A stretch of 64,000 bases of DNA. Origin: Octopus sinensis. Taxonomy: Eukaryota. A model generated the notes under the pieces. The model did not search any database and was not told the origin of the DNA. It worked only from the letters and a program-made list of their open reading frames with translations. The position numbers were made by a program, and so were the translations under genes. The DNA is taken from assembly GCF_006345805.1 (NCBI RefSeq), contig NW_021833042.1, positions 24,268 through 88,267 on the forward strand, in the 5' to 3' direction. Shown one piece after another: positions 6,574 through 53,448 of the stretch (positions within the stretch are counted from its first letter, which is position 1; every line of letters begins with the position of its first letter).

Positions 6574-8784
6574 TCATTCTTCAAATACATTAATTATCCC
6601 AATGATTTTATCTGATAGGGATATATCAAAATGAAATTTAATATTGAATATCGATAATAATTTTGGTATCATAGACGTCATCAATATTAAGGTAATCCGT
6701 GTGAATCCTGATAAATCCAAATCCTTTCGACTTATTATATTGTTGCAAGCAAAGAAAAAAGATACGATTAGAAATAGCTTTACAATGGATTTAGCAATCT
6801 CGTATCTCAAAGGAAAATGATGGTCAATAATTGTTTTAAACAACTTGACATTAATGAATTCCTGTCCATATTTTGACAGAACTAAATTTGGACGAACACT
6901 TTTCGTAAACTTTATAGTTTGAACTAGTATAGTATGATACTTTTCCTGAATAGTTTTCGTAACTGCAAAACCGTAAACAAAAAACATGGCAACAAACCAT
7001 ATATCGCCAACAGTATCAGGTTTAGCAAGCATTACAATAGCTATTGAAAATGAATAGTTGCAAAGAACTTGGAAAGTTGTAAGAAAAATATAAATCGAAT
7101 CTAAATACCATAATACATAAAAGGGCAACGAAGCGAATGTTAAGATAAGATCAATAATCTTGGAAATATGGTTAGGATTCAAATACATTGGTAAAATATA
7201 GACTTTGAAGTAACTTAAGGGTAAAGTTAGAATCAAATAAACGATTGGGATTCCGTAATAAACGAGGCACAGAAGTAATTCGCAGATAGAAAATACAGCA
7301 AATAAAATCGTGATCGTAATAAATAACCAAAGAAATATGAATTGGCTAAAAATATTTCTCTCGTAGAAATAAAGACAAATTTTCTTTATACGTTTAATCC
7401 AAGTATAAATAATTAAATACCACAAATTTGGGTTTAAAGCCGTAGAAATATTAGCTATCATTATCGTATAAAGTAGATCGTAATCTTCAAGTGTAGAAAT
7501 ATTAAAATTTCCATAGTTCTCTATTAATGTGATATTTTGAATGAGAAATGTGCAAGTTGATCTTTGATGTAATGTACTATAAATGATAGTCTCACTTAAA
7601 CGACTGGGAAGAACGAAGAGAATAAAGTTGAGAAATATATAGATAATTATCCAAAAAAATGGACCCCCGAAAAAACCATCTGTATTTTCATAGCTTTCTG
7701 AGGTTCCTAGAATCATGGCACAATAACCCAATGGAATACGATCATGTAAAAGTATTTTCATCGTTTCATATAAAAATAAATAATGCATTAAAAGATCCAG
7801 GAACATTATTGAAAGAGGAAACATAATAAAAATGAATCTTCTTAGTTTTGAAGCAAAGAAAGTGGAATGGTGAAAACAAAATAACCAAGATAGAAAATGA
7901 GAGAAAGTGTAAATATTATGTTTTTCATTGATCCATTCTAATTTGTGTGGCAATGTGTAGTTAATTCTAAATAAGAATTCATCGTTAGCTAATTGTTGCT
8001 GGTTAAGTTCTCGAGAATATGAAGGTAATTTAAGTTTTGATACAAAACTAACAAGCAATGGAAATATGGCCCACAGAACCGCCCCAACAATATTTTCATA
8101 ATTAACAAACATACTATTTTCAATGATGTTTCCAGAACAAATGGATTTCGGTTCATAAGTGCGTTTTTCATTCTTATGTAGTTCACAGCAATAGTTTTTC
8201 AGTATCTCTCGATTTATACCCAATCTTCTGTATGTTATTAACGTATAAGGGCTGTTCTTCTGTATATCATGCGACAAATTTATAAAAAAGCACATGTATC
8301 CAGATTCTCCCATTTGCAATTTATCGATAAATACGATTCTCTTTAATTCCTCGAAAATAAAAAATATTACATCGTGTCTCTGAATATTTTGTTTCCCACA
8401 ATTTATATCGATAACAATACTTGGAGTAGCAACGTAAACATCTAATATATTAAATGAATGAATTGAGAAGTCATAGTGAAAATTTTTATACGCTACTAAA
8501 CCATCTGGTTTATCTGGAATCCATATGAAATGCCTCGCATTTGCATAATAATCCAGTGGTACAGGATTGAGAAGCCCATCCAGTGTTTTATCAGCTATAT
8601 GGACTTCGAAATTGAAAACCAGTTTACCTGATTTTACTAAACGAGTTAAAGTTTGACTGACATTAGGAGAAATTTTAATTTCACAATTATTTCCGAGTCC
8701 TTTCGCATCTATGTTTAGTGATGTAAGTGAGATAATAAGGGTCATTGATAAAAGAAGTGCTGTTACCATATGCATGACAGCCAT
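6574..8784 (-). CDS. Orphan multi-pass membrane protein, paralog 1 (736 aa, single coding exon)
   Basis: Long stop-free ORF with a hydrophobic signal-like N-terminus, an ectodomain of about 200 aa with Cys residues and NxS/T sites, then about 9-10 hydrophobic segments. Colinear paralogs at 35-38 kb and 51-53 kb. Confidence 0.9.
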   Translation of the reverse strand: MAVMHMVTALLLSMTLIISLTSLNIDAKGLGNNCEIKISPNVSQTLTRLVKSGKLVFNFEVHIADKTLDGLLNPVPLDYYANARHFIWIPDKPDGLVAYKNFHYDFSIHSFNILDVYVATPSIVIDINCGKQNIQRHDVIFFIFEELKRIVFIDKLQMGESGYMCFFINLSHDIQKNSPYTLITYRRLGINREILKNYCCELHKNEKRTYEPKSICSGNIIENSMFVNYENIVGAVLWAIFPLLVSFVSKLKLPSYSRELNQQQLANDEFLFRINYTLPHKLEWINEKHNIYTFSHFLSWLFCFHHSTFFASKLRRFIFIMFPLSIMFLDLLMHYLFLYETMKILLHDRIPLGYCAMILGTSESYENTDGFFGGPFFWIIIYIFLNFILFVLPSRLSETIIYSTLHQRSTCTFLIQNITLIENYGNFNISTLEDYDLLYTIMIANISTALNPNLWYLIIYTWIKRIKKICLYFYERNIFSQFIFLWLFITITILFAVFSICELLLCLVYYGIPIVYLILTLPLSYFKVYILPMYLNPNHISKIIDLILTFASLPFYVLWYLDSIYIFLTTFQVLCNYSFSIAIVMLAKPDTVGDIWFVAMFFVYGFAVTKTIQEKYHTILVQTIKFTKSVRPNLVLSKYGQEFINVKLFKTIIDHHFPLRYEIAKSIVKLFLIVSFFFACNNIISRKDLDLSGFTRITLILMTSMIPKLLSIFNIKFHFDISLSDKIIGIINVFEE

Positions 8785-8794
8785 ATTTCGTTAT

Positions 8795-8814
8795 CTGTAA
8801 AAAAAGAAAAAAAT
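8795..8814 (-). promoter_or_regulatory. Putative splice acceptor 10 nt before the ATG of paralog 1
   Basis: Minus strand reads ttttttctttttttacag|ataacgaaatATG. Same spacing and sequence type in paralog 2. Confidence 0.75.
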
Positions 8815-8970
8815 TATCTGAGCACACATATATTGATGAAGGGTTAATTTCATCTTTCTTATTTCGTAATTATTTGAAATGAAGAATATTGATTTAAAAC
8901 TGAAAAGAAATGTCTTTTATTTTATTTAGTTTTGTTTTTCGATCTCTAAGAAAGTTTAGACGAATGTCTT

Positions 8971-9351: not shown

Positions 9352-9819
9352 GCACTTCAGCAGCAGATCAAGGAATGAAGTCTATCAGTCAGCCTGATGC
9401 CCTCTTTGATACCCTTCCAGCAACTTTAAGACATGTCACACTCTCCACTCTTTAAGATATTTTACCTAGAAGGCTACTACAGTATGAAATCTACAGTTTG
9501 CTCTTGATTGCAGCCGTCTTAATCCGATAAGCCATTATGATAAAACCTCTGTTCTAAAGAGTGGGATCGGATAGTGCCCACCGACTCACACTTTAAAACT
9601 AGTAAGAGCAGACAGGAAGAAAAGAGTGTTAAGCTCCGTTTATATAACCACTTAATGGTGTGTCGCTTTTCCATTTGGTATTCGGATACGAAGAATCTAC
9701 TATAATTGTATGCTCTCTTTCATCTCTTTTACTTGTTTCAGTTATGAGACTGCGGCCATGCTGGGGCACCGCCTTAAAGGGGATTTTTATCGAATTAAAC
9801 GACCCCAGAACTTGTGTAT

Positions 9820-9859
<40 letters not shown>

Positions 9860-9861
9860 AA

Positions 9862-9900
<39 letters not shown>

Positions 9901-9919
9901 AACTTGGTATTTATTCTAT

Positions 9920-10200
9920 CGGTGTCTTTGTTGAACAGCTATGTTACGGAGATGTAAACACACCAACACCGGTTGTCAAGCAGTGGTTGTGGGCAAACAC
10001 AGACGCAAAGAAACGCACACACACATATATATATATAGATATGCATGCGAGAGGCTTATTTCAGTTTCCGTCTTTCAAGTTTAAGCTTCCTGAGGCTAGA
10101 GTAGAAAATGCTGGCCCAAGGTACCATGCTGTGAGAATGAACCCGGAACCATGTGGTCAGGAAGCAAACACATTGCCACACAGTACACTGCGCCTATATT
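9920..10200 (-). mobile_element. Degenerate tRNA-derived SINE (family A)
   Basis: Matches the family A head and core seen at 23522-23927. Confidence 0.6.
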
Positions 10201-10689
10201 GAGAGAGAAAATAAAATAGAGGTTGAGAGATAGAGAGAGTGGGGTAGACATAGAGAGACAGAGAAAAGATCGACGTACTGCTAAAGAGAAAGGGATTGGG
10301 AGAAAGCTTCAGAGACATAAATACAGAGATAGATAGGGAAATAGAGACAGGGGAAGGAGGGAAGGCGGAAACATTTACATACATGACTAAGATACATTTA
10401 ACAAGCAGCAACGTGTTCATAAATAGGGCAGAATTCTCGCTTAAACAGCCCAAATAAGCCCTCATAACTTTTTTTTATTTATGGCAATTTTCAGAAAAAG
10501 GTTTGTTAATTTTTGTCCTAAACATGGGAATTCATAACATCCGTATTAATATTAAAATTGTCGATCATTTTTCTCTTTTAATCTATTTGAAATACGGGCG
10601 GTCTGAATTTTTACCTAAATTCCAGCAGCAGACCGCCCTTCGGTTTATCATAATTCCATTAAATGGGTTCATGGAGAGAAAAATATATA

Positions 10690-16560: not shown

Positions 16561-17612
16561 TTGTAAGAGGAGAGGCTCGGGAATTATATAAAGACGACTC
16601 GCTATCTATATTGAGAAGAAGTAGTAGCGTGGAAATGGAGAGAAGTAAGAAAAAACTAGATTTTTAAAAAAATCTCAACGAAGAGAATTTCGAGTTTTTC
16701 CAAACTATACATGCATACATACATACATGCATGCATGCATGCATGCATACATACATACATACATACATACATACATACATACATACATACATACATAAAT
16801 ATATACATACATACATATATACATGCATACGTACATACACAAATGCGTGTATATAAAAAAGGGAAGGAGTATTTAGTAGATCAAGAATAAAGGAATTGTA
16901 TTTTTTTGTGTGGCTGTTTTAGGGTGAAGCGGGGTCACAAAACCCTGTTAATAGCAAACGTACATGTCAACAAGTCTACATACCAATATGGTCACACACA
17001 CACACAAACATGTATTTAGTTTTTACACTGTGTACACACATAAACACACGTCCTAACTACAGAACTCAGAAGAAAACAAACACATAAAAAAAGAAATGAT
17101 TTCATAAGCATACTCTTTGTCTTCACACACAATCCCAAAACCTATGACATTCTCAATACTACTAAAAGATGTCTCCCAGTTCTTAAACAGTCATCAAAAA
17201 TGAACAAACTAATGACAAAATCAGAAAAAATATATAGCTGACGCCAAGCAACCAAATTAAAAGACTTTTTAACAAAAATCAAGATTTACAATGAGAGGCG
17301 TAAAATCTTAGCAGGTAGACATGAAGGAATCAACCGAGGAAGGAAGAGAAAATCTTCTCAAATATTCTGTGCAACAGGCTGTAGCGATGCGAAGGGAAAA
17401 AATGTGGAAATGTTGACTGTAGCGTAGAGCATAGTGCACGCAACTGCAGCAGAGAACGGTCGACGCCTCTCGCAATAGAAGTCATTAAAATAAAGAAAAG
17501 ACAGAAAAAGGGAAACAAAATATAAAAATCTACTGTAGAGTTACTTTGAAATTTCAGCATAGGTGGAAACTTTTTTAAAACAATTTAAAAAAAAAAAAAA
17601 TCAATGTGCTAT

Positions 17613-17730
17613 GCTTACGGCACCAAGGTTTCCGAAGCGGTCACCCATCTAAGTAATGACTAGGCTCGACGTTGCCTAACTTCGGTAACCGGACGAGAAC
17701 CGGTGCTTTCAACGTGATATGGCCGTAAGC
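17613..17730 (-). rRNA. 5S: 5S rRNA gene, type 1 (GCTTAC...GTAAGC), copy A
   Basis: 118 nt, full 5S sequence with box A and box C, perfect helix I, long oligo-T at 17601-17585. Confidence 0.9.
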
Positions 17731-18474
17731 AATTGTCAGCTCGAAGTTTAACAACTTTATTCTAATAAACGACTAAATGCTAACATTTATATTCTCTTAC
17801 AATGTAAACTTGCTTTCGTCACAATCTTTACGTCTCTACACTGCTTTTCTTCTACCAGCTCACTATTGCATCGACTAAGCAATCTTTCTTTTATTCTAAC
17901 TCCCATTGTTCACCACTAGCGGCTACCCTCACGCTTACTCACTCTCTCGCTTTCAGATTTCACTTTGCCGCTGACAATTTGATCAATAGGCCTTCACTGT
18001 CGCACCACACTACCCTTGCTGCTGCTACGTCCCCATCTTACCCACAAATGCTCCTCAACACAACGTCGCACACGTCATCACAAACATTTGCTCTGGCTAT
18101 CCACACCAATAGCAAATACCTGAGCATCATCCTAACACGACGCTCGTCAAAACAACAACGTCCAACACTTAGCAAAATTATCGCAGCTTGCGTGATTGAC
18201 GCTTTTTCAATTCACTTCCGTCGACATTATGCTTGTGGAAACTACTCTCTCGCTGCATATTGCTAAAACTCGCATCAAGTTTACTCACTGGTGCATAATT
18301 GGACACTTGGCAGCGAGCAATGTAAGCAAGGTAAGTAACGAATGCTGCTAATGACAACAATCCTAATCAAATGTATGCTAATTTGAATGCGACAGGCAAG
18401 CAAAGACAAAGCCACAGATTTGCTATCTTCACATGGTATATCAAATAAAAACGTTCTAATGACTCGGCTCTATC

Positions 18475-18568
18475 GTTTACGGCCATATCACATCAATGAA
18501 GTTAAGCAAATTCGAGCCTAGTTAGTACTTAGATGGGTGACCGCTTGGGAAACCTAGGTGCTGTAAAC
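18475..18568 (+). pseudogene. 5S: 5S rRNA type 2 pseudogene with a 24-nt internal deletion, copy B
   Basis: GTTTACGGCCATATCAC joined to GAAGTTAAGC. Lacks CCGGTTCTCGTCCGATCACC. Confidence 0.85.
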
Positions 18569-19903
18569 GTCTTTCTCTCTCTTTATTTTCGATTTATTCT
18601 TGCAGTCTTCTCCACTTCAAGTGCATGTCTGCTTTCACTTCGAACAAAAATTATACATATTTGCACGCACCAATTTCCATGCTTTACTCTCACTGCACTT
18701 GCGCAGCTCTATTTTGCCAAATGAAATCACTGTTTACCAATGTTTATTTTGTCTTTCAGTCGTAGCCACCGCTCGCCTCAAGGTTCAACCAGCTTTCACT
18801 AATTCAGCCACATACACAACAAAAAAACACACACACATACACAACAATCACACACACAAACAAAAAAAATACACACACGCACACACATACACAACAAAAA
18901 CACACACACACAGGTAATCGGTCCGTAAGTCAGGGATAACATTGAAATAAACAAGCCTTTGAAGACAGAAAACAGAAGACTGAAAAGGATGAATAACACA
19001 GCAAGTGAATTGAGGTCAAAACAGAGAATACGATTGGTTAAAATTCGAAGAATTAAACTACGTAAAAAGTAGAAATTACGTTTTTCTCAAAAAAACTAAT
19101 TGAAATTAATGTTTTCTTTTGACACATTCTACCAGTATGCGAAGTTTCAAATTATTTATTTAAAAGGGAAAATCTGTCCGAATAAAACCGCGTTTTATTT
19201 TACACACATCTCAGCATCGTTGGCTTTGTCTTTGCCGGCCTGTCGCATTCAAATTAGCATACATTTGATTAGGATTGTTGTCATTAGCAGCATTCGTAAC
19301 TTACCTTGTTTACATTGCTCGTTGCCAAGTGTCCCATCATGCACCAGTGAGTAAACTTCATGCGGGCTTTAGTAATATGCAGCGAGAGAGTAATTTCCAC
19401 AAGCATAGTGTCGATGGAAGTGAATTGAAAAAGCGGCAATCACGCAAGCTGCGAAAATTTTGCTAAGTGTTGAACGTGGTTGTTGTGGCGAACGTGGTGT
19501 AAGGATGATGCTTAGGTATTTGCTATTGGTGTGGATAGACAGAGCAAATGATTGTGATGACGTGTGCCACGTTGTGGTGAGGAGCATTTGTGGGTAATAT
19601 GGGGACATAGCAGCAGCAGGGGTAGTGTAGTGCGACAGTGAAGGCCTATTGATAAAATTGTCGGCGACAAAGTGAAATCTGAAAGCGAGAGAGTGAGTAA
19701 GCGTGAGGGTAGCCGCTAGTGGTGTACAATGGGAGTTAGAAGAAAAGAAAGATTGCTTAGTCGATGCAATAGTGAGCTGGTAGAAGAGAAGCGGTGTAGA
19801 GGGGTAAAGATTGTGTCGAAAGCGAGTTTACATATTAAGAGAAAAAAATGCTAGCATGTAGTCATTTATTAAAATAAAGGTGCTAAAGTGCGAGTTGATA
19901 ATC

Positions 19904-33594: not shown

Positions 33595-34549
33595 ATAGCG
33601 TAACACCCCTCTCTCTCACACACCAAAAAAAGATGCGAGAAAAAGCAAATAAAATTTATGGTATCTCTCTCTGTCTCTCTCTGTTTCTCTCTCTCTCTGT
33701 CTCACACACACAGTAACATACACTTTCTCTCTCATTCCGACAACACACATCACTCTCTTTGTCTCTCTCTCTCTGTCTCTCTCTCTCTCTCTCTCTGTCT
33801 TTCTCGCTCAGTCAATCACGCACACACTCAAGAAAGATGCGAGGAAGACAATTTTTTTTGCTTATAACAGGGGAAAACAAAAAAATAGATAGAATTATGG
33901 TTAGAGGATGAATAATTAGTATAGAGATCATGAGGGAAGAAGAAGAAGAAGAAGAAGAAGAAGAAGAAGAAGAAGAGAAGAAGAAGAAGAAGAAGAAGAA
34001 GAAGAAGAAGAAGAAGAAGAAGAAGAAGAAGAAGAAGAAGAAGAAGAAGAAAGGAAAAAGCAATATATAACAAGTCGGTGTATCTGGACTAAAGATTCTC
34101 AAAATGGTCAACGATTCCCAGAATACTTATAGGTAAAAGCAGAGAACTGGAGTTCAGAAAAGTGATTTAAAAATTTATAAACAATGTTATTTTTCAACGA
34201 ATATTGTTTGGGTGCATTGAAGATATGTAAAATAAAGAAAATATAGAATATATAGAAAAATAAATTTGAAATTTAAAATTTCAGTATGTCCAAGAGCACT
34301 AGTATAATTACAATATCGTGTCATATAATAAGTTGGTAAGATGCATAGATTGAAAATTAATACTTAGTAACGTTGATATAATAGCCCTATAAAGGAGACT
34401 GCAGTAAAATGGGTTTATAAAGTTTGAAGATTAAGAAAGATAAAGATTAAAATTTAGAATGAGCAGAAGCAAAACTTTATATTAAGTTTTGCAGTAAGTT
34501 GCTAATTTTAAATGATAAATTGAATGTGAGAAACTTTTCGGAACAAATG

Positions 34550-35170
34550 CCCGATATACAATCACCTAAGAAGGCCTTCATGTATGCCCTGCCACTTCTG
34601 TCGATAGACAAGCAAATCATGCAGAGTCCCTCTTGGAGCTACGAGCTGATAGTGATAAAGAATGTGATTCAGAGTAAAAGAGTCGCGTAGTCTGACACTT
34701 ATTAGAATAGTGCAAGATAAGAGTAAAATTTAGAATAGCTGGAGGAAGCATTCCAAGAGATTAGGAAGAACCATTTAAGAGCTTGGGGCATATATACGCT
34801 GGGACATTGTCAGATACGAGTCGTGGGATGCAGATCATGAAACAAGCCAGGAGTGGACTAACAGTTGGTTCGAAGCTACCAGGGAAGCAAACTAAGGTGC
34901 TTACATTTCGGCTTATATCCGCAACTTTCGTGGCCACTTTTAATATACGAGGTGGCATAACACGAGTCCAAATCATTGAGAAAAAGTGCAATGCATTCAT
35001 TAGAAAGTGGTTAGGCGTACGTCGGATATTGAACAGCTCAGCTTTTTATCGAAAAGAGGCTCAATGCAATTACCACTGGAGTCAGTAGTCGAAATTAATG
35101 TAGTAAGGAAGGTGTGAACGGTGATGATGCTAAGAGAATCGAAGGATGTAGAAATCAGGTAAAATCCACC
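34550..35170 (+). mobile_element. Hero/R2-like non-LTR RT fragment
   Basis: PKKAF..DKQIMQS, KSLGHIYAGTLSD..KLPGK..ITRVQIIEKKCNAFIRKWLG. Confidence 0.7.
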
Positions 35171-35436
35171 AGATTACTATACAAAGTAGTTAAAACTGAT
35201 GGAATAATTTCTGGAATATTGGAATAATTATATTTTTGGGAAAATGTTAATAGTTTCGTAAATTCATTTGGATTCATTTCCTTTTGGAAATTCATAAATT
35301 GTGTGAATAACTTTGTGTGACAGAGACGTATCAAAATGAAATTTAGCATTAATTTTCGACAATACATTAGGCATCCATGAAGTCATCAATATCAAAGCAA
35401 TCCGTGCGAATGCTGATAGATCAAAATCCTTTCGAT

Positions 35437-38079
35437 TTATATGTTATTGCAAGCAAAGAAAAAAGATACGATTAAAAATAATTTTACAATGGCTTTACCA
35501 ATCTCGTAACTCAAAGGAAAATACTCGTTAACGATTGCTTCAAACAATTTGGCATCAATGTATTCCTCTTCATATTTTAACTGAACTAATTTTGGTTTTA
35601 TAGTTTTGGTAAACATTATTGATTGAACTAGTATCCCTTTATAATGTTCCTGAATAGCGTTCATAACTGTAAAAGCGTGAACGAAAAACATGGCAATAAG
35701 CCATATACCACCGACAGTATCAGGTTTAGCAAGCATTGCAATAGCTATTGAAAATACATAAGTGCAAATGATTTGAAAACTCATAAGAAATACATAGCCT
35801 GAAGCAAATGCCCATAATATAAAAAACGGCAATGACGGCAATGATAAAATTTTATCAGGACACTTGGAAGGATATATATTTTTCTTCATTAGAGGTAAAA
35901 TATATTTTTTGAAATAACTTAATGGTAAAGTTAGAATCAAATATATGAATGGGATTCCGTAATAAACGAGGCGGAGAAGTAATTCACAGATAAAAAATAC
36001 AACAAATAAAATTGTAGCCAAAATAGGAAGCAAACATAATATAATTTTTATAAAAATATTACTCTTGCAGAAAATAGTCCACATTTTATGTATACGCGTA
36101 ATCCACTTAACAAATATAGATTTCCAGAAATATGGGTCGGCAGCAATGAAAACTTTAACTTTAATTATTGCAAGGAGTCGATCATAACCCTGAAGTGTAG
36201 AAAAAGAATCTTCTTTGAGTTTTGTATCTAATATACTTTCAGCGATAATCTCACTTAAATGACTGGGAAGAACAAACAGGATAAAGTTAAAAATTATGTA
36301 GCTGATTATCCCCAAAAAGGGACCCCAAACAAAACAATCTGAAAGTTCATAGCTTTTCTGGATTCCTAGAATGAAGGAGCGATAACCCAATGGAATGCGA
36401 TCATGTAAAAATATTGTCACCGTTTCATATAAAAATAAGTAATACATTAAAAGATCTAGAAGAATTACTGAGAGAGAAAGCAAAATAAGAATACCTCTTC
36501 TTAGTCTTGAAACAAACAAAGTCGAATAATGAAAACAAAACAACCAATATAAAAAATGAGAGAAACTGTAAATATTATGTTGTATACTAATCCATTCTGA
36601 TTTGTCTGGCAATGCGTATTTACATAGATATTCATTGTTAGGTAATTGTTGCTGGTGAGGTTCTAGGGAGTTTGGCGATGTGTCTTCATTTTGAGAATTT
36701 AATCTCTCGTTAGTTGACTGTTGCTGGTTAGGTTCTAGGGAATTCGGCGATGTGTCTTCATTTCGAGAATGCACTTCCTCGTTAATTGATGGTTGCTGGT
36801 TAGGTTCATTTGAATTTGGTGATGAGGGTAGAATTTCCAAATGCACTTCCTCGTTAGTTGATTGTTGATGGTTAGGTTCTAGGGAATTTGGTGATGAGGG
36901 TAGAATTTCCAAATGCACTTCCTCGTTAGTTGATTGTTGATGGTTAGGTTCTAGGGAATTTGGTGATGAGGGTAGAATTTCCAAATGCACTTCCTCGTTA
37001 GTTGATTGTTGATGGTTAGGTTCTAGGGAATTTGGTGATGAGGGTAGAATTTCCAAATGCACTTCCTCGTTAGTTGATTGTTGATGGTTAGGTTCTAGGG
37101 AATTTGGTGATGAGAGTAGAGTTTCCAAATGCACTTCCTCGTTACCTGATTGTTGCTGGTTAGGTTCATTTGAATTTGGTGATGAGGATAGAGTTTCCAA
37201 ATGCACTTCCTCGTTAGTTGATTGTTGCTGGTTAGGTTCATTTGAATTTGGTGATGAGGGTAGAATATCCAAATGCACCTCGTCGTAACCTGATTGTGGC
37301 TGGTTGCAGGAATACGGAGGTAATTTAGCTTTTGATATAAACCTGATAAACAATGGAAATATGGCCAACAGAACTGCTCCAACAACATTTGCACAATTGA
37401 CAAACATACTGTTTTCAATGGTATTTCCAGAACAAATGGATTTTGGTTCATAAGTAGTATTATCATTTTTATGTAGTTCACAACAATAATTCTTCAGTAT
37501 CTCACGATAAATACCCAATATTCTGTACGCTAATAACGTATAAGGACTGTTCTTCTGCATGTCGTGCGACAAATTTATAAAGAAACACATATATCCAGAT
37601 TCTCCCATCTGCGATTCATTGATAAATACGATTCTCTTTAATTCCTCGAAAATCGAATATATTACATCGTATCGCTGAACATTTTGTTTTCCACAATTCA
37701 TATCGATATCAATACTTGGAGTAGCAATGTAAGCGTCTAATATATTAAATGAGCGAATTGAAAAGTCAAAGAGGACATTTTTATACATTACTAAACCATC
37801 TGGTTTATCTGGAATCCATGTGAAACGTCTCGCATTTGCAAAATAATCTAGTGGCACAGGATTGAGAAGGCCATCAATTTTTTTATCAATTATATGGACT
37901 TCAAAATTGAAAACTTGTTTGCCTGATCTTACTAGACGAGTTAAATTTTTAATGACAGTGGGAGAAATTTCAGTTGTACAATTATTTCTGTGTTCTTTTG
38001 CATATGTGTTTAGTGATGTGAGAGAAATAATAAGGATGACTGATAAAAGAGGTGCTGTTACCATCTGCATGACAGCCAT
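35437..38079 (-). CDS. Orphan multi-pass membrane protein, paralog 2 (880 aa, repeat-expanded, C-terminally truncated as assembled)
   Basis: Colinear with paralog 1. Stops at CNNI*. The homologous tail continues in a shifted frame to a TGA at 35266-35264. Confidence 0.85.
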   Translation of the reverse strand: MAVMQMVTAPLLSVILIISLTSLNTYAKEHRNNCTTEISPTVIKNLTRLVRSGKQVFNFEVHIIDKKIDGLLNPVPLDYFANARRFTWIPDKPDGLVMYKNVLFDFSIRSFNILDAYIATPSIDIDMNCGKQNVQRYDVIYSIFEELKRIVFINESQMGESGYMCFFINLSHDMQKNSPYTLLAYRILGIYREILKNYCCELHKNDNTTYEPKSICSGNTIENSMFVNCANVVGAVLLAIFPLFIRFISKAKLPPYSCNQPQSGYDEVHLDILPSSPNSNEPNQQQSTNEEVHLETLSSSPNSNEPNQQQSGNEEVHLETLLSSPNSLEPNHQQSTNEEVHLEILPSSPNSLEPNHQQSTNEEVHLEILPSSPNSLEPNHQQSTNEEVHLEILPSSPNSLEPNHQQSTNEEVHLEILPSSPNSNEPNQQPSINEEVHSRNEDTSPNSLEPNQQQSTNERLNSQNEDTSPNSLEPHQQQLPNNEYLCKYALPDKSEWISIQHNIYSFSHFLYWLFCFHYSTLFVSRLRRGILILLSLSVILLDLLMYYLFLYETVTIFLHDRIPLGYRSFILGIQKSYELSDCFVWGPFLGIISYIIFNFILFVLPSHLSEIIAESILDTKLKEDSFSTLQGYDRLLAIIKVKVFIAADPYFWKSIFVKWITRIHKMWTIFCKSNIFIKIILCLLPILATILFVVFFICELLLRLVYYGIPFIYLILTLPLSYFKKYILPLMKKNIYPSKCPDKILSLPSLPFFILWAFASGYVFLMSFQIICTYVFSIAIAMLAKPDTVGGIWLIAMFFVHAFTVMNAIQEHYKGILVQSIMFTKTIKPKLVQLKYEEEYIDAKLFEAIVNEYFPLSYEIGKAIVKLFLIVSFFFACNNI
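36637..37284 (-). repeat. Nine in-frame 72-bp tandem repeats (EEVHLEILPSSPNSLEPNHQQSTN-type)
   Basis: Unit length counted directly (atgcacttcc recurs at 36841 and 36913). The central units are identical. Confidence 0.95.
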
Positions 38080-38089
38080 GTTTCGTTTT

Positions 38090-38108
38090 CTGTAATAAAG
38101 AAAAATTG
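38090..38108 (-). promoter_or_regulatory. Putative splice acceptor 10 nt before the ATG of paralog 2
   Basis: ttttttctttattacag|aaaacgaaacATG. Confidence 0.75.
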
Positions 38109-38326
38109 AACATATAAATTAATGGAGGTTTAATTTCATTTTCCTTATTCCGTAACTATTTAGAATGGAAAATATTTATTCAAAACTAAAGGTAACTGTC
38201 TTGTAGCTTGTTTAGTTTTGTTTATTCTTTAATCATGCTTTCGTTCATAGTCATACTGTGTATATTTTCATATCAATCTCTTGACACTTCCTCTTGAAAT
38301 TTTTATTGTGATTTCTTTGAGTGCAA

Positions 38327-39750: not shown

Positions 39751-40689
39751 TATATATATATATATATATATTTTGTTTCCTTGTCCTGTCTTTTACTGTT
39801 TTTATCGTTATTTATACTGTTTTTTTCTTCATTTGTATTGCTTTTACGTCCTGTTCTTGTCACTTTTTTTTATTTTACCCCTCCGCAAATGAATCTTATT
39901 TAATTCATTTTGCGGGAAGGACTGCTTCGGTGTTGTCGTGTTCTGCCCTTACCTTCGAAACAAGCATTGAGTCGAAACAGGGGCAGCTGAAGAAGGGGAA
40001 TTTTCCTTGTGTTGTTTGTCTTGTACTCTGTTTTTTCGTTGTTAAAAAAAGTCCTTTTACTTGTTTGGTTTTATGTTATCGTTTCTCGTTGTGTTCTACG
40101 TTTATTTGTGGTGTCCTGTACTCATATATGCATGTATATATACATATAGATGTAGGTACGTACATATATGTATGTATGCATATGTTTTATTTATTAAATT
40201 GTTATTATATATATGCACACACATATATATCAGTAAACAAACAGGGAGTATCAAGGATTGAATAGAAAGAACACAACAAAGAAAAAAATTAACGGAAACA
40301 CAGCAAACAGAAAACTAAGGAATCCGTGACAAGAGTAAAATTAGACGAAAACATAACCAACGGAAAATTCGACAAAAACATGGAACATCGAAAATTCGTA
40401 GCTGATTTCCTCATCAGTGAATGTCCAAATTATCCTGGTGGTTTCTCTCTTTGTGTCAAAAAATGACTACTAAATATTACTTATATCAGCGCTTAAATTT
40501 TTTTTGAAAAGGATACATTGGCTATAATAATTTCGAGTAGGCATTACGCCTTTGTAGACAGGATAGTGGTCGGAGATGGAACATTTTGTACAATAGAACT
40601 ACTTGTTCAAACTTACCTTTCAGCTAAACAATAGCAACAATACCAACGACGGTGACCACAACAACAGCAATAACAATAGTAAGAATTGT

Positions 40690-40702
40690 TTTCTTACCTT
40701 TT
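40690..40702 (-). promoter_or_regulatory. Putative splice donor of non-coding exon 1, paralog 2
   Basis: AAG|GTAAGA with GT at 40697-40696. A second perfect AAG|GTAAGT lies at 40616. Confidence 0.6.
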
Positions 40703-41270
40703 GTGAGCGAGTCACTTCTCAAACACGAAAATGTAATTTTGTTCGCTTTCCTGGTTAAAATAAATGTGCGATAAGATAGTTGGTCTGCACAATAATAACT
40801 TTAGTTTGATTTAATGGCTTTAAATACAGACATAAATACATAGATACATACATTCATATTTATATACACACATATATACTTATATGAATATATACATACA
40901 TAACCTAGATAACGACAATGCTCTCTGAGTATATTAGTTGCAAACAACTTGCAGAAAGAAGTGCTAACAGTTAGATATCACAGATGCCAGATACTACCTG
41001 ATGTATGAGGTCATCAAGAGAGAAGGCACATCGTTCTGAGAACTTTCTTTCGCTGGTGTTATTGCACATTGACCCCACTTACAGAGATAAGGCCCCGCTT
41101 ACTAGAGCAACTGTTTCATGTGGTATTCTTCTAGCCACTTAGTATAAAGGGGGGGAGATATGTGTAAGAATGTATTTACATAGGTAGACGTGTATATGTC
41201 TGCATGTCGTGAGTGTTTTTGTATGTATGCATATACGGGCACACACACACACTCATATATATGTGTGTGT

Positions 41271-41745
41271 AAACGCTCTAAGTTAAGTCGTATTTAGGCA
41301 ATGCATATAATTAAGGCTAAAGTATCTTCCTGGTTGCTAACAAAAATTTAATTAGCCTTTACTATTTAATTGAAATAATACTGTTTTTTAAACAATGGCG
41401 GTGAAACTTAATAGACATTTTCAATGTTTTAGGTGCCTAATATCCATGTATGGATATGTTTAAAATTTCACACTCATATATATATGAGTGTGAAATTTTA
41501 AACATATCCATACATTTTCCCTTTGTCACTACTATACCTTTATTAAATAGGACTTAACTGATATCAAGTATCCTGTTTACATTATACCTTCTCATGTCCA
41601 AAATATTAGGCACCTGAAACATTGAAAATGTCTATTAAGTTTCACCGTATTATTTCTATTAAATAGCAAAGGCTAATTAAATTTTTGTTAGCAGCCAGGA
41701 AGATACTTCAGCCTTAGTTATATGCAATGCCTAAATAGAGCGTTT
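41271..41745. repeat. Nested fold-back (inverted duplication) upstream of paralog 2
   Basis: 41271-41445 is the reverse complement of about 41603-41745. Inner palindrome about 41446-41515 centred on (TA)n. Confidence 0.85.
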
Positions 41746-42204
41746 ACTCACAGTTATAGAACGATAATACACACATAATAACGTTTTAGAATGCATTCTA
41801 AATATACGAGGTGGTATCAAAATATTCCCGGACTAGTTATCTTCTTATATAATAACACGTTTAGTGTGACCCTGTCTTTCACGCTGTACGTTGTAGGTAA
41901 AAAAATAGTAAAACAACACACGAAGTGGCAGTGAGTGGTAGTCAGAGATGCTAAAGCAGAAAGACAATATTTAAAGGCTCTACTCGGAAGACGCTAGGGA
42001 AAGACGAGTGACAGTCTGAGGCGACGACAGTCAGAGGTGAGCTCTGAATTCCCCACAATGAAAATGAAATCAAATTTACATCGTAAGTTATATCTCTCGA
42101 TTTCACAAGCACACACACACACACACACGCACACATTTACACATACACACACGCATTTGTATGCACACGCATAGATTTACATACATAGGTATGTGCATGT
42201 ATGA

Positions 42205-44076: not shown

Positions 44077-44520
44077 AATTCAAGATTTTAAATTTGAGAG
44101 CAGCACTGCAAAAATTAAACATGCCTTATCTGACCAGGCGACATCAGACAACATACATCTAACGACCAGTACTTCCGAATTCAAACAGAATTATGCTCAT
44201 AATTATAAAATTGTATGTATCGAAACATTTGTAACGATTAAAAAGTTGCCTAACCATACTTACTCTTCCTTTTGACTCTTTTAATTTTTACTTACTCTTC
44301 CTTTTGACTCTTTTAATTTTTACTTTATATATATATATCTCATGGTGCGATACGAACACTTAACGTGGTTTTTGTAGTCAGAGTTTCGACTGCTATTTCG
44401 GCATGTTGGTGTCTCTTAGACACCCTCATTTTTAATTGTTAAAAATTATTACCTTTGTACGGTATTTTTCCCATGCTGGCCACTTGATAATATGGATACT
44501 TAAATATCGATATTATCCTC

Positions 44521-45830
<1,310 letters not shown>

Positions 45831-46099
45831 GTCTTGGTTTAACAACCGTCACGTTTGCTTTTACTGTCTTGTTCTCACTGTCCTCTTTTTGTTACCACTT
45901 TCGCTCTCCGCAAAAAAAACCAAATTTTATTTAATTTGCTTTTTTTACCTGTTCAAAGTATGTTTTTACCTTTTCATATTATATTCGCTATCTGTTATCT
46001 TCTTCTTCTTCTTCTTCTTCTTCTTCTTCTTCTTCTTCTTCTTCTTCTTCTTCTTCTTCTTCTCACTGCTATTACTCTTATTATTGTTATTATTATTAT

Positions 46100-46620
46100 T
46101 GAGTGAGAGAGCAGTGCATGCCATCAAAGTGACACTAGAGTAAAATATACGAAGCCCAGTATACTCATCATGACTATCCGTCTGATAAGGGTACAGTAGG
46201 CACATGCATCATACCCATATGTGCGTGACATGATAATCTCATATCAAGATAAGCAGTGCATGACGTTGCAGGTGGGACTCAGAATTTTCTTCTGGTCGAG
46301 TAGCCCATCCGCTTAAAAGGTCCCTGAATAAGGAACGAAACACCCATGTTTCCAGAAGTGAATTATTCAAACCCCAAAGAATTCCTCTCAACACATGGCT
46401 ATGATGCTCCCCCACTACTTCTGCTCATGATCAGAGATGCAAATATCGCCAGCCATTAATGGACATGTTTAACTGGTTGGGGTCAAAGAACTGACAAGGA
46501 AATCTGTGGTATTGAGGAGAATATTTGCTGTAGCCCATTTTTATACCAAGACAAAACAATGTTCCTGATAACACTTCCAATCAGTGAAGATCAGAAGCCA
46601 TGAGAATCACTGCCTAGTAC
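46100..46620 (-). mobile_element. Copy 3 of the (TAA)n-embedded non-coding element
   Basis: Reverse complement of 370-859 with about 60 extra 5' bases. Confidence 0.75.
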
Positions 46621-46639
46621 TGCATATTATTATTATTAT

Positions 46640-46865
46640 TCAGCAGTTTTATTTTTATAATATGCTTTCACTGCATTACCGAGCGCAGCTCTGTGTGCCT
46701 TAGGTATGTGCTGTGGTTTGCCGTGATGCTCTTATGGTAATTGTATTGAAAGCGTTTTATGCAGGATATGTGCAGTGCCTAGTAGTACTATTTTCTGTAT
46801 GTTATATATAATTTTTAGTCCTGGTATTTTTGTTATGTATTTGTCTGAATGTTTTGTATCATACC
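46640..46865 (-). mobile_element. Short 3' end of the R4/Dong-like element
   Basis: Reverse complement of about 2960-3182, between (TTA)n tracts. Confidence 0.8.
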
Positions 46866-46959
46866 TATTATTATTATTATTATTATTATTATATTATTAT
46901 TATTATATTATTATTACTATTATTATTATTATCATTATTATTATTGTTGTTATTAAGGC

Positions 46960-49740: not shown

Positions 49741-50954
49741 CTATTAACACTGTCGGATTCCAGACTCATACCGAAATTCTTCAGGTGTAGAAAATCCCGG
49801 TTTCATGACCTTAAAAACGTTGTGTGGGTGTGCTGAAGAGTAAACTATAATACAAACAAGAAAACGAATAAATCATTTAATTCACCTTTAATGATTCGTT
49901 ACAATTATTTTTGATTAACTTTTCTGTTAACAATTATTTACGTAAATAATTCGAAGTTAAAATTTGTGTAACGTTTGCGGCTTTAGACATTTGAGTTGCA
50001 CTTCGTCAGACTTGTATCAAAGGTGTGGCTCTTACGTTTTGCGTCGTCCAGACATGACATTTTTTTTTTTTTGCTTATATCGGGAGGAAACGAAAAGTGG
50101 ATAGAAGTATTGTTAGACGGTGAATAATTAGTATAGAGATCATGAGAGAAGGAGAAAAAGGAAAAATAACAAGAACTACGGACATTAATAAATGAGGAAA
50201 AGACAATATATAGCAAACCAGTGTATCTGGACTAAAGATTCTCAGAATGGTCAGTCAATACAACATTATGACCGGTACAAAAATTCATTAGATGTGTGAG
50301 AAATTATTTCAGTTTAAGATTAAAAGTATGAGACGAATGAAACTGATGACAATGGTAAGAACTATTGCCAGAATTACTTTAATTGAAAAGTGGTCAAAAA
50401 AGTTATAATCTATGTTAGTTTTGAACGAATATAGTTTAGATAAATTGATGATATATAAAATAGAGAAAATAGAGGAGATATAGGAAAATCAATTTGAAAT
50501 TTAAAATTTTAGTATGTCCAAGAGCAGTGGCATAATTACAATAGCGAGTCGTATAAAATGTAGTAGATAAGATGCTTAGATTGAAAGTAAATACTTAGCT
50601 AGTAATATAGATATGACAGCCCTATAAAGCAGACTGTAATAAAACACGATCAAGGTAAAAAGGGATAAGATAAAATATATAATGTATTAAGTTTGAAGGT
50701 TAAGTATAAGAGTTTAGAATTAGCAGAAATAAAAATGTTATGTAAGTTATACAGTAAGTTGCGAATTCTTTATAAATGGAATAGTAGATAAAGCCGTAGA
50801 GAGGGAAAATTGATAGTTAGCTAGTAATATTCATATAATGGGATTGGAGTAAAGCATAAATGTATGAAGTTTAAAATCATAAATTTACAAGTAAAATATA
50901 AAAAATTGTAAATTATAAATTGAAAGTGACATACATCTTGGAACAATGGCCCAT

Positions 50955-51295
50955 ATACAAACACCTAAGAAGGCCTTAATGAATAACTTGGCACTTCTAT
51001 CTATAGACAAGCAAATCATGCAGAGTGCCCTTACGAGGCTAGATGAGCTGATGAAGCAATAAAGGATGCGATTTAGAGCAAAAAAGACACGTATTCTAAC
51101 ATTCATTAAGGCAGTGAAAAAATTAAATTAAAATTTAAAATAGCAAGAGAAAGTATCCCAACAGTTAAAGAAGAACACGTAAAGAGCTTGGAGTGTATAT
51201 AGGCTGGAACATTGCCAGAGAAGAGTTGCGGGATACAGATAATGAAAAAATCCGGATGTAGACTAACAGCAATTGATGAATCAAACTACTAGGGA
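50955..51295 (+). mobile_element. Hero/R2-like RT fragment homologous to 34550-34900
   Basis: Same sequence in the same position relative to the paralog 3' end. Confidence 0.7.
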
Positions 51296-53448
51296 TGTAA
51301 AATAACTTGCTCTCGGATTCATTTCATTTTCCAAATGTTTTGTTTCAATAACATTGTCTAACAGAGGTTTCTTAAAAGGAAATTTAGTAGTAATTTTCGA
51401 CAAAAATTTAGGTATCGCAGAAGTCACCAACATCAAGGCAATCCGTGTGAATGTTGATAGACCCAAATCCTTTCGACTTATTATGTTATTGCAAGCAAAG
51501 ATAAAAAGATACGATTAGAAATAGTTTTACAATGGATTTACCAATCTCGTGTCTCAAAGGACAGTGTTTGTTAACGATTACTTTAAACAACTTGGCTTTA
51601 ATGAATTCCTCTCCACATATTGACAGAACTAAATCTGGGTGAACAGGTTTGGTTAACTGTATAAATTCAACAAGAAATACGTAGCTTGAATAAAATGCCC
51701 ATGCTATATGAATTAGCAATGACATCAACGATAAAATTACAATAACACACTTGAAAATATGACTACGTTTCTCATAGAGAGGTAAAATATACACTTTGAA
51801 ATAACTTAATGGTAAAGTTAGAATCAAATATACGAAGGGGATTCCGTAATAAACGAGACACAGAAGAAATTCGCAGATAGAAAATACAGCAAATAAAATC
51901 ACAATAAAAGGAAAAAAAATATAAATTTTGGAACATTTTTATCCCATTTTTTTTATACGTTTAATCCAAGTACTAAATAGTAAGTACCAGAAATCTGGGT
52001 TTGCAGCAACAGAAATATTAGCTTTCATTATTGCAAGGAGTCGATCATAATCCTGAAGTGCAGTAACATTCAAATTACCATACTCCATTAAAATTTTTTT
52101 ATCTTTAATGAGAAATGTGCAAGTGGATTCTTGATATAATGCATTATAAGCAATAGTGTCACTTACACGACTGAGAAGAACTAAGAGAATAAAGTTAACA
52201 ATTATGTAACTGATTATCCCAACAATAGGATTCAAAACAAAACTACCTGAAAGTTCATTACCTTTCGGGATTCCTAGAATGGAGGAGCGATAACCCAACG
52301 GAATACGATCGTGTGAAAATATTGTCAACGTTTCATATAAAAATAAGTAATACAGTAATAGATCCAGGAGAATTTCTGAGAGAGAAAGCAGAATAAGAAA
52401 GCCTCTTCTTAGTCTTGAAACAACAGTAGTCGAATAATGAAAGCAAAATAACCACGATGAAAAAATGAGAAAAACTGCAAATATCATGTTTTACACAAAT
52501 CCATTCCGATTTGTCTGGCAATGTGTGTTCAATTGTAAATTCATCGTGATGTAATTGTTGCTTGTTAGATTCAGGGGAATCTGGCGATGCGTGTTCAATT
52601 GACAAGACGACTTCCTCGTCAGCTGATTGTTGCTGGTTAGGTTCACTGGAATTTGGCGATGTGTTTTTAGTTGGCAAAGAGTGGTTAGCTGATAGTGGTA
52701 ATTTAGCTTCTGATACAAAACTGATGAATAATGGAAATATAACCCACAGAACTGCTCCAACAATATTTGCACAATTGTCAAACATACTATTTTCAATGAT
52801 ATTTCCAGAACAAATGGATTTCGATTCGTAAGTGTGCTTATCATTTTCATGTAGTTCACAGCAATGGTTCTTCAGTATCTCTCGATTTATACCCAATCTT
52901 CTCTATGTTGATAACGTAGAAAGGCTGTTATTCCTCAAGCGACGCGACAAATTTATAAAAAAACACATATATCCGGATTCTCCCATCTGCAAGTTATCGA
53001 TAAATACGATTCTCTTTAATTCTTCGAAAATCAAACTTACCGAATCGTATCTCCGAATATTTTGTTTTCCACAATTTATATCGACAACAATATTTAGAGA
53101 AGCAATGTAAAAGTCTAATATATTAAATTAATGAACTGAAAAATCAAAGAGGACATTTTTATACATTACTAAACCATCTGGTTTATCTGGAATCCACATG
53201 AAATGCCTCGCATTTGCAAAATAATCCAGTGGTACAGGATTGAGAAGATCATCGAGCTTTTTATCAGCTATATGGACTTCAAAATTGAAAACCAGTTTGC
53301 CTGATTTTACTAACCGAGTTAAATTTTGACTGACATTAGGAGAAATTTTAATTTCACAATTATTTTCGAGGTTTTCCGCTTGTATGTTAATGATTGATGT
53401 CAGTGAGATAATAATGGTGATTGATAAAAGAAGTGCTTTTACAATATG
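51281..53448 (-). pseudogene. Orphan membrane protein paralog 3, pseudogene
   Basis: No ATG or acceptor. TAA at 53130-53128, TAG at 52905-52903, frameshifts near 52460, 51940 and 51505, and a deletion of about 55 aa in the TM region. Confidence 0.9.

What the first reader, a model, noticed from the sequence alone, without database searches (positions are those of the whole stretch)
6574..53448. Tandem family of orphan single-exon multi-pass membrane proteins in birth-and-death evolution
Seen: three colinear minus-strand paralogs (intact, repeat-expanded, pseudogene). Each has a signal peptide-like start, an ectodomain of about 200 aa with conserved Cys (including CC..C before TM1), one TM, a variable loop and a further 8-9 hydrophobic segments with conserved motifs HDRIPLGY, LVYYGIP and KLF...H.PLR.EI.KSIVKLFLIVSF. 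I recognise no GPCR, Cys-loop, ionotropic, MFS or TRP signature. Inference: an intronless, tandemly duplicated, fast-turnover ectodomain plus polytopic protein is the architecture of lineage-specific sensory or recognition receptor or channel families. This is the best candidate for an undescribed system here.
Basis: partly seen in the sequence, partly recalled or inferred. Interest (0 to 1): 0.8.

Follow-up and report, generated by a model that had tools for sequence, protein, structure and literature searches.

The report
Undescribed nine-pass membrane protein family in octopus
Three neighbouring octopus genes (one intact, one intact except for a single-base gap, one dead) belong to a large, unnamed family of membrane proteins of molluscs and a brachiopod that matches no described protein family or solved structure, so its function is still open.

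Summary
Three colinear minus-strand paralogs exist.

- **P1** (6574-8784) is an intact 736-aa ORF.
- **P2** (35437-38079) carries a 72-bp x 8.3 repeat. It differs from an uninterrupted 938-aa allele in an Octopus sinensis scaffold by one missing base.
- **P3** (51347-53448) is a pseudogene with 3 stops, 2 frameshifts, no ATG and a deletion.

- **Not orphan.** A whole-library profile search finds 134 clusters. The named ones come from Octopus, Argonauta, many bivalves and the brachiopod Lingula, all labelled "uncharacterized".
- **Not intronless.** A conserved splice acceptor lies 10 nt upstream of the ATG, so only the coding part is a single exon.
- **The ectodomain is not hypervariable.**

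The family matches no Pfam model and no PDB sequence. A confident AlphaFold model (pLDDT 81.5) has no Foldseek match in PDB or BFVD. The UniRef label "STRA6" fails Pfam, hhalign and fold tests.

The predicted architecture is a signal peptide, a glycosylated six-cysteine α/β ectodomain, and nine TM helices (N-out, C-in) with a near-invariant Glu in TM4. Intact copies evolve at dN/dS about 0.3.

A surface receptor, channel or transporter role is inferred, not shown.

The parts
6574..8784 (-). Paralog 1: intact single coding exon of 736 aa. It has a signal peptide (about 1-25), an α/β ectodomain with 6 conserved Cys (about 33-224) and 9 TM helices (about 225-250, 309-337, 375-391, 478-511, 513-534, 539-587, 589-630, 659-685, 693-714).
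   Evidence: ORF; hydropathy; AF2 model with pLDDT 81.5 and pTM 0.77; dN/dS 0.31-0.35 against O. bimaculoides copies.
8785..8937 (-). Conserved upstream block of paralog 1: a polypyrimidine tract and the TTACAG splice acceptor (AG at 8796-8795), then a 10-nt leader before the ATG.
   Evidence: Alignment of P1, P2 and three O. bimaculoides paralogs. Homology with P2 and L001 ends about 115-153 bp upstream.
35437..38079 (-). Paralog 2: an 880-aa ORF as it stands in the window. It has lost residues that are conserved across the family (C506R, Y604H, R660S) and has a 15-aa deletion in the cytosolic loop.
   Evidence: dN/dS against P1 is 0.56 overall and 1.14 in residues 396-477.
36706..37305 (-). 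72-bp (24-aa) tandem repeat, 8.3 copies, expanding the disordered loop between TM1 and TM2.
   Evidence: TRF. The loop has pLDDT <50 in P1. All 14 substitutions relative to the O. sinensis scaffold lie in or next to the repeat (37115-37349).
35282..35464 (-). Displaced C-terminal 61 codons of paralog 2 (last TM helix and tail), put out of frame by a 1-nt gap at about 35441.
   Evidence: The reference scaffold L009 has the extra A and an uninterrupted 938-aa ORF.
38080..38223 (-). Upstream block of paralog 2 with the same splice acceptor (AG at 38091-38090).
   Evidence: The O. vulgaris model P0018 joins an upstream exon exactly at this acceptor.
51347..53448 (-). Paralog 3: a pseudogene with 3 in-frame stops, 2 frameshifts, no ATG, no splice acceptor and a deletion of about 55 aa in TM6-7. 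Its closest intact relative is O. bimaculoides P0009 (75% identity).
   Evidence: Stops are also present in the O. vulgaris copy.
60565..60596 (-). Candidate upstream leader exon, with donor GTAATT at 60564-60559. In the O. vulgaris annotation it is spliced across paralog 3 to paralog 2. This part is tentative.
   Evidence: L008 exon 1 plus GTAAGT donor. It maps uniquely to the window at 98.8% identity. The evidence is a gene model only, with no reads.
34157..34901 (.). 3' flank shared between paralogs 2 and 3 (matches 50385-51311). It is part of a larger duplicated segment, which also includes 39457-41855 matching 53467-56887.
   Evidence: Self-blastn. P1 shares only the coding exon plus or minus about 150 bp with P2.

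Best explanation
**What it is (shown).** The window is Octopus sinensis-type DNA. It carries three tandem, same-strand members of a previously undescribed family of membrane glycoproteins of about 730-940 aa. The family is found in cephalopods, bivalves and a brachiopod.

**Predicted protein.** Each protein has:
- a signal peptide;
- an α/β ectodomain of about 190 aa, held by six conserved cysteines and enriched in N-glycosylation sites;
- a first TM helix, followed by a disordered cytosolic loop of variable length (repeat-expanded in P2);
- eight further TM helices, giving an N-out, C-in nine-pass topology.

The most conserved elements are a Gly/Pro-rich extracellular loop (P351-x-G-F...G373-G374-P375), a near-invariant Glu (E502) in the outer half of TM4, and tight Pro turns (P513, P589).

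**Genes.** The whole coding sequence lies in one exon behind a conserved 3' splice site. Copies arise by DNA-level tandem and segmental duplication, exchange segments, and decay. P1 is intact, P2 is one base away from an intact allele, and P3 is dead.

**How it works (inferred).** I think it most likely sits in the plasma membrane or a secretory-pathway membrane. The ectodomain and the conserved extracellular loop would bind an extracellular or luminal ligand. The nine-helix bundle, with its buried Glu, would then conduct or translocate a cation or small solute, or transmit the signal.

My confidence in the family and its architecture is about 0.85. My confidence in the receptor, channel or transporter mechanism is about 0.3.
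For: - **Copies and their defects:**
- **Species:** 99.5% identity over 22.8 kb to O. sinensis scaffold VCDQ01000806.1.
- **P2 intact elsewhere:**
- **Family breadth:** 134 clusters at 50% identity, 114 with E<1e-10, mostly full length. Named members come only from Octopus, Argonauta, Ostrea, Mercenaria, Mytilus, Mya, Ruditapes, Potamilus and Lingula, all labelled 'uncharacterized'.
- **No described relative:** no Pfam match, no NCBIfam match and no PDB sequence match.
- **Structure:** the AF2 model has pLDDT 81.5 and pTM 0.77. Its best Foldseek hit is E=0.67 in PDB and E=0.7 in BFVD, with TM-scores about 0.07.
- **Topology:** hydropathy, K/R bias in the predicted cytosolic loops, and sequon density of 2.1 per 100 aa in the ectodomain against 0.45-0.7 elsewhere.
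- **Conserved residues:**
- **Selection:** dN/dS 0.31-0.35 between intact copies.
- **Gene structure:** single coding exon in O. bimaculoides (three copies), Mercenaria (with a tandem neighbour at 60% identity), Lingula and an unnamed contig. Splice acceptor.
Against: - No expression data, localisation or ligand is available. Function is inferred from architecture and family dynamics only.
- The ectodomain is no more variable than the TM core. That is not what a diversifying recognition receptor usually shows.
- No internal repeat typical of many transporters was found.
- I could not inspect the model's coordinates, so no pore or cavity was assessed.
- Foldseek can miss distant all-helical similarity, and no AlphaFold DB or PANTHER comparison was possible.
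- P1 itself has no annotated counterpart at 90% identity or more in the O. sinensis or O. vulgaris proteomes.
Confidence: 0.55

Rival explanations
1. The proteins are distant STRA6/RBPR2-type retinol-uptake receptors, as UniRef names two O. bimaculoides members.
For: UniRef names P0001 and P0002 'Receptor for retinol uptake STRA6'. The predicted nine-TM, N-out, C-in topology is the same as that reported for STRA6 (my knowledge of the zebrafish structure).
Against: - Pfam RBP_receptor (PF14752) matches a genuine STRA6 at 869 bits. It matches none of the 42 family members at E<=1, nor P0001 and P0002 at E<=10.
- hhalign of the family profile against a 16-sequence STRA6 alignment gives probability 0.07%.
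- No STRA6 chain is among the 42 Foldseek PDB matches at E<=10.
- The spacing of the TM helices differs, and STRA6 has no 190-aa ectodomain.
- STRA6 and its ligand RBP4 are reported absent from an annelid (PMC5821490).
- Only 2 of about 9 O. bimaculoides paralogs carry the name.
Confidence: 0.03
2. It is an intracellular (ER, Golgi or endolysosomal) housekeeping-type membrane protein, such as a cargo chaperone or organellar transporter built like the TM9SF nonaspanins. It would not be a surface sensor.
For: It has the same overall architecture: a signal peptide, a luminal domain of about 200 aa, and nine TM helices. Conservation is uniform across domains, with no hypervariable ectodomain.
Against: No member matches any Pfam model, which includes the EMP70 model of TM9SF. 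Dozens of divergent paralogs per lineage, tandem arrays, pseudogenes and dN/dS about 0.3 are unusual for housekeeping organellar proteins. The family appears restricted to lophotrochozoans among named members.
Confidence: 0.25
3. It is a membrane-embedded enzyme, for example a glycosyl-, acyl- or lipid-modifying enzyme with a luminal domain.
For: It is a polytopic protein with a near-invariant Glu in a TM helix, conserved Arg, Tyr and Lys near the membrane faces, and a conserved extracytosolic loop.
Against: There is no conserved His, Asp or Ser set and no acidic motif in the conserved extracytosolic loop. There is no Pfam or fold match to the GT-C, MBOAT, PAP2 or other enzyme families.
Confidence: 0.1
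4. The copies are decaying or selfish sequences with no host function, such as retrocopies or genes derived from a transposon or virus.
For: The coding sequence is a single exon in an intron-rich genome. The copies are multicopy and dispersed on at least two chromosomes. Pseudogenes are present, and the copies are surrounded by transposon remnants.
Against: - dN/dS is 0.31-0.35 between intact copies.
- Full-length conservation spans molluscs and a brachiopod.
- The paralogs share 100-150 bp of intron plus the splice acceptor, so duplication was at the DNA level, not through spliced mRNA.
- There is no viral fold match.
- There are no terminal repeats around the unit.
Confidence: 0.05

Closest known systems
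STRA6 / RBP_receptor family (PF14752)
   Same: Both are multi-pass proteins with a predicted nine-TM, N-out, C-in topology. Two octopus members carry this name in UniRef.
   Different: No HMM, profile-profile or fold similarity was found. The helix spacing differs. This family adds a signal peptide and a six-Cys ectodomain. It has a single coding exon and occurs as a multicopy lophotrochozoan family.
TM9SF / nonaspanin (EMP70) proteins
   Same: The architecture is the same: a signal peptide, a luminal N-terminal domain of about 200-250 aa, and nine TM helices (this family; TM9SF: my knowledge).
   Different: No member matches any Pfam model, including EMP70. The ectodomain here is α/β with three putative disulfides. 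The family is expanded, fast-diverging and taxonomically restricted.
Expanded intronless, tandem receptor-channel families of molluscs (e.g. lophotrochozoan nAChR expansions, PMC6896357)
   Same: The genomic behaviour is the same: single coding exon, tandem arrays, large lineage-specific expansions especially in bivalves, and pseudogenes (paper abstract).
   Different: The proteins are unrelated, with no Cys-loop or ligand-gated channel Pfam match. Here the copies keep a 5'UTR intron acceptor, which argues for DNA duplication rather than retroposition.

Membership tests
STRA6 / RBP_receptor | Match to the Pfam PF14752 model above its gathering score | tested here: not met
   There was no hit at E<=1 in 42 members or at E<=10 for the two proteins so named. 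A genuine STRA6 scores 869 bits.
STRA6 / RBP_receptor | Profile-profile homology to STRA6 sequences | tested here: not met
   hhalign gives probability 0.07% and E=0.7. The STRA6 alignment was mammals only, so it is shallow.
STRA6 / RBP_receptor | Fold similarity to the solved STRA6 structure | tested here: not met
   No STRA6 chain is among the Foldseek PDB matches at E<=10. I did not verify that the library holds the STRA6 entry.
STRA6 / RBP_receptor | Binds RBP4 and transports retinol | not testable with these tools
   This needs a binding or uptake assay.
GPCR, Cys-loop, iGluR, TRP, MFS and other described channel or receptor families | Match to the family's Pfam model or fold | tested here: not met
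   No Pfam family was found at E<0.01 in any of 42 members. TRP structures appear only at E>=2.4 with probability <=0.05.
TM9SF / nonaspanin | Match to the EMP70 Pfam model | tested here: not met
   No member matches any Pfam model at a meaningful E-value. The architecture alone is shared.
Birth-and-death multigene family | Tandem paralogs with pseudogenes alongside copies under purifying selection | tested here: met
   There are three colinear copies. P3 is disabled. dN/dS is 0.31-0.35 for intact copies. Octopod copies form their own clade. A tandem pair also exists in Mercenaria.
Processed retrogene / truly intronless gene | No intron anywhere, and homology between copies limited to the mRNA | tested here: not met
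   A polypyrimidine tract plus CAG acceptor 10 nt before the ATG, and about 100-150 bp of intron, are conserved between paralogs on different chromosomes. Two O. vulgaris gene models splice at that acceptor.
Octopus orphan (taxonomically restricted) gene | No homologues outside the lineage | tested here: not met
   There are full-length homologues in bivalves and Lingula at E=1e-20 to 1e-36.

The most novel reading that the evidence does not exclude
The family is a new structural class of lophotrochozoan cell-surface ion channels or receptor-transporters. An extracellular six-cysteine domain would gate a nine-helix bundle whose near-invariant TM4 glutamate lines a cation path. The family would have expanded independently in octopods and bivalves for chemical or immune sensing.
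Probability: 0.2. Interest if true: 0.85.

Novelty: categorically new. Interest (0 to 1): 0.58.

Why it matters
Molluscs and brachiopods would hold a large membrane protein family with a confidently predicted fold that no solved structure or curated family explains. There are at least 134 clusters at 50% identity. Families with this genomic behaviour in molluscs have turned out to be sensory or immune receptors. A new nine-TM class could therefore open an unexplored route of chemosensation, immunity or transport in cephalopods and in commercially important bivalves.

The work also corrects a misleading database label (STRA6). Left in place, that label would imply vertebrate-type retinol uptake in octopus.

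Tried and rejected
- **Family and sequence searches.** Pfam on the window proteins and on 42 to about 60 family members found nothing. NCBIfam found nothing. PDB sequence searches with the single protein and with two profiles found nothing below E=0.17.
- **First AF2 run.** With 12 close octopod sequences the model was unusable (pLDDT 41). Adding 30 distant members fixed it.
- **Fold searches.** Foldseek against PDB and against viral structures gave no match.
- **STRA6 hypothesis.** Rejected.
- **Second homologous-protein run.** Given the broad alignment, it returned only the same 19 octopod proteins.
- **Internal repeat in the TM domain.** None found by hhalign.
- **Gelsolin synteny.** The gelsolin gene next to O. 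bimaculoides P0001 is not in the window. P1 is therefore not the positional orthologue of P0001.
- **Literature.** Searches for 18 accession numbers or locus names of family members, and for STRA6 in octopus or molluscs, found nothing about this family.
Full report
**1. Observation**

The window has about 35% GC and is rich in microsatellites and transposon remnants. The three minus-strand copies are real.

P1 (6574-8784) is an intact 736-aa ORF. tblastn of P1 against the window finds P2 at E=1e-129 to 1e-134 and P3 at E=0.

P2 (35437-38079) is an 880-aa ORF. Its TM1-TM2 loop is expanded by a 72-bp unit repeated 8.3 times at 36706-37305. The ORF ends prematurely at ...FFFACNNI, and the last 61 codons continue in another frame at 35464-35282.

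P3 (53448-51347) is a pseudogene:
- in-frame stops at 53128-30, 52903-05 and 51939-41;
- frameshifts near 52463 and 51500;
- no ATG;
- a deletion of about 55 aa in TM6-7.

**2. Species, and the state of P2**

An O. sinensis scaffold (VCDQ01000806.1, locus L009) aligns to window 48040-25254 at 99.5% identity in one piece. O. vulgaris chromosome OX597818.1 (L008) is colinear at 97.5-99%.

In L009 the P2 gene is one uninterrupted 938-aa ORF. The window differs from it by 14 substitutions, all in or next to the repeat, and by one missing A at about 35441. P2 is therefore intact in another assembly of the same species, and the window's frameshift is a polymorphism or an assembly error.

P2 nevertheless looks relaxed or diverging.
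- It has replaced residues that are conserved across the family (C506R, Y604H, R660S).
- It has a 15-aa deletion in the cytosolic loop.
- Its dN/dS against P1 is 0.56 overall and 1.14 in residues 396-477.

P3's closest intact relative is O. bimaculoides P0009 at 75% identity. The O. vulgaris copy of P3 also carries stops, so this pseudogene predates the split of the two species.

**3. Duplication mode and gene structure**

P1 shares only the coding exon plus about 45 bp downstream and about 150 bp upstream with P2. P2 and P3 also share flanks: 34157-34901 matches 50385-51311, and 39457-41855 matches 53467-56887.

Upstream of the ATG, P1, P2 and three O. bimaculoides paralogs on two chromosomes share a polypyrimidine tract and TTACAG, followed by a 10-nt leader. 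P3 has lost this.

Two O. vulgaris gene models join upstream exons exactly at that CAG.
- P0018 joins an exon equivalent to window 60596-60565 (donor GTAAGT in O. vulgaris, GTAATT in the window) across P3 to P2.
- P0019 joins gelsolin exons to the orthologue of P0001.

The genes therefore have a single coding exon but are not intronless. Because the paralogs share intron sequence, they arose by DNA duplication, not retroposition.

The single coding exon is family-wide. It is seen in:
- O. bimaculoides, three copies;
- Mercenaria, with a tandem neighbour at 60% identity;
- Lingula;
- an unnamed 267-kb contig.

**4. The family**

The word-indexed search found only 19 octopod proteins, from O. 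bimaculoides, O. sinensis, O. vulgaris and Argonauta hians, at 55-80% identity.

The exhaustive HMMER profile search found 134 clusters at 50% identity. Of these, 114 have E<1e-10, and most are 750-900 aa and match over the full length.

I looked up 30 of these clusters. Every named member is 'uncharacterized' or 'hypothetical', and they come from bivalves (Ostrea, Mercenaria, five Mytilus species, Mya, Ruditapes, Potamilus) or from the brachiopod Lingula. In a neighbour-joining tree the octopod copies form one clade together with three unnamed sequences, apart from a star-like bivalve radiation.

The family is therefore not an octopus orphan, but the octopod expansion is lineage-specific. It comprises roughly ten gene models per species, on at least two chromosomes.

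**5. Relation to known families**

No Pfam model matches any member at a meaningful E-value. NCBIfam gives nothing. PDB sequence searches give nothing below E=0.17.

UniRef names two O. bimaculoides members 'Receptor for retinol uptake STRA6', so I tested that label.
- A human STRA6 sequence, recalled from memory and then verified by an 869-bit full-length match to PF14752, served as the yardstick.
- PF14752 matches none of the family members.
- hhalign of the 42-sequence family profile against 16 STRA6 sequences gives probability 0.07%.
- No STRA6 chain appears among the Foldseek matches.
- The literature reports STRA6 and RBP4 absent from an annelid (PMC5821490).

The label is unsupported.

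**6. Structure**

With 12 close sequences AlphaFold failed (pLDDT 41). With the 42-sequence alignment it gave pLDDT 81.5 and pTM 0.77. Only the signal-peptide junction (21-32) and the TM1-TM2 loop (253-281) fall below 50.

The model shows:
- an N-terminal helix (the signal peptide);
- a mixed α/β ectodomain;
- helices at 225-250, 309-337, 375-391, 478-511, 513-534, 539-587, 589-630, 659-685 and 693-714;
- cytosolic helices at 396-474;
- a β-hairpin at 635-645.

Foldseek finds nothing better than E=0.67 in PDB and E=0.7 in BFVD, with TM-scores about 0.07.

Three lines support the N-out, C-in topology.
- Hydropathy agrees with the helix positions.
- K/R content is 13-25% in predicted cytosolic loops 3, 5 and 7 and in the tail. 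It is 0-11% in the short outer turns.
- N-glycosylation sequons run at 2.1 per 100 aa in the ectodomain, present in every member, against 0.45-0.7 elsewhere. Cysteine is 4% of the ectodomain.

Residues conserved across the family:
- C34, C129, C165, C199, C200 and C216;
- W86 and W88;
- P242;
- R313 and R316;
- P351-x-G353-F354, G360 and G373-G374-P375;
- P393;
- F454-W455 and R465;
- E502 (41 of 42 sequences) in TM4;
- P513, P589, Y604, Y616, P658, R660, K669 and P707.

There is no internal repeat.

**7. Selection**

Nei-Gojobori dN/dS between intact copies is 0.31-0.35 and is similar in every domain. Protein conservation is likewise uniform. The extracellular loop 338-374 is the most conserved segment family-wide, and the TM1-TM2 loop and the C-terminal tail are the least conserved. 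The ectodomain is therefore not a hypervariable recognition module.

dS between P1 and O. bimaculoides P0001 is mosaic. It is 0.09 in TM2-3 and TM4-7, but 0.55-0.58 in the ectodomain and C-terminus, which is the same as to other paralogs. The 5' parts of the three window copies are 83-87% identical, against 74-78% for the rest. This suggests gene conversion or recombination between paralogs.

**8. Interpretation**

*Shown.* This is an undescribed, lophotrochozoan-restricted (as far as named members go), expanded family of nine-TM glycoproteins, evolving by tandem duplication, segment exchange and loss.

*Inferred.* The extracytosolic disulfide-bonded domain, the conserved extracellular Gly/Pro loop and the buried TM4 Glu suggest ligand binding coupled to ion or solute passage or to signalling. 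The expansion pattern resembles mollusc receptor-channel families such as the intronless tandem nAChRs (PMC6896357).

I put about 0.85 on the family and its architecture, and about 0.3 on a surface receptor, channel or transporter mechanism.

The rivals are an organellar TM9SF-like role (0.25), a membrane enzyme (0.1), selfish or decaying DNA (0.05) and STRA6-like (0.03).

**9. Limits**

- I had no access to model coordinates, AlphaFold DB, PANTHER or RNA-seq.
- The leader exon and the internal in-frame intron rest on gene models only.
- The sources of many homologues are unnamed.

Noticed in passing
window 35437-35445 (about 35441): A single missing A in ATAATAAAT truncates P2 in this window. 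The 99.5%-identical O. sinensis scaffold L009 has the base and an intact 938-aa ORF. This is a polymorphism or an assembly indel.
   Followed up: yes
window 6574-8784 compared with L001:10001-12244: Synonymous divergence between P1 and O. bimaculoides P0001 is mosaic: dS is 0.09 in the TM2-3 and TM4-7 segments and 0.55-0.58 in the ectodomain and C-terminus. The 5' thirds of the three window copies are also more alike than the rest. This suggests gene conversion or chimeric paralogs.
   Followed up: partly
L009:10001-12817; proteins P0014, P0017, P0018, P0019: Four gene models from two species and three loci skip an in-frame stretch inside the coding exon and share one internal acceptor just before (S/A)IA(M/V)(L/I)AKPD. 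In L009 the skipped 291 bp are open, so this may be a real in-frame internal intron removing TM4-6 or TM2-6.
   Followed up: partly
window 60565-60596 (-): A short exon with a GT donor is used in the O. vulgaris annotation as the first exon of the P2 orthologue. It lies 7 kb upstream of the P3 pseudogene, which hints at a shared leader or promoter for the tandem copies.
   Followed up: partly
L001:1-7460 and protein P0019: A gelsolin gene lies 2.5 kb upstream of O. bimaculoides P0001 on the same strand. The O. vulgaris annotation fuses gelsolin exons to the family member through the conserved acceptor. This is either a read-through transcript or an annotation artefact. There are no gelsolin exons in this window.
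   Followed up: partly
window 1471-2676 (+): A 401-aa ORF with the C-terminal part of a reverse transcriptase domain and a zf-RVT domain: a non-LTR retrotransposon remnant. Related repeats lie at 1-1356, 2908-3201 and about 46000-46867.
   Followed up: partly
window 26612-27581 (+): Two overlapping ORFs look by eye like a frameshifted Tc1/mariner-type transposase. Pfam gave no hit at E<=0.001. A partial inverted copy lies at 30510-31143.
   Followed up: partly
window 17289-21589: A complex of direct and inverted repeats of about 1 kb at 83-91% identity, probably nested transposon copies.
   Followed up: no
window 4581-5093, 9660-10202, 44439-45791: Long microsatellite and low-complexity tracts, including (CA)n/(TA)n and purine-rich runs, create spurious long ORFs.
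   Followed up: no
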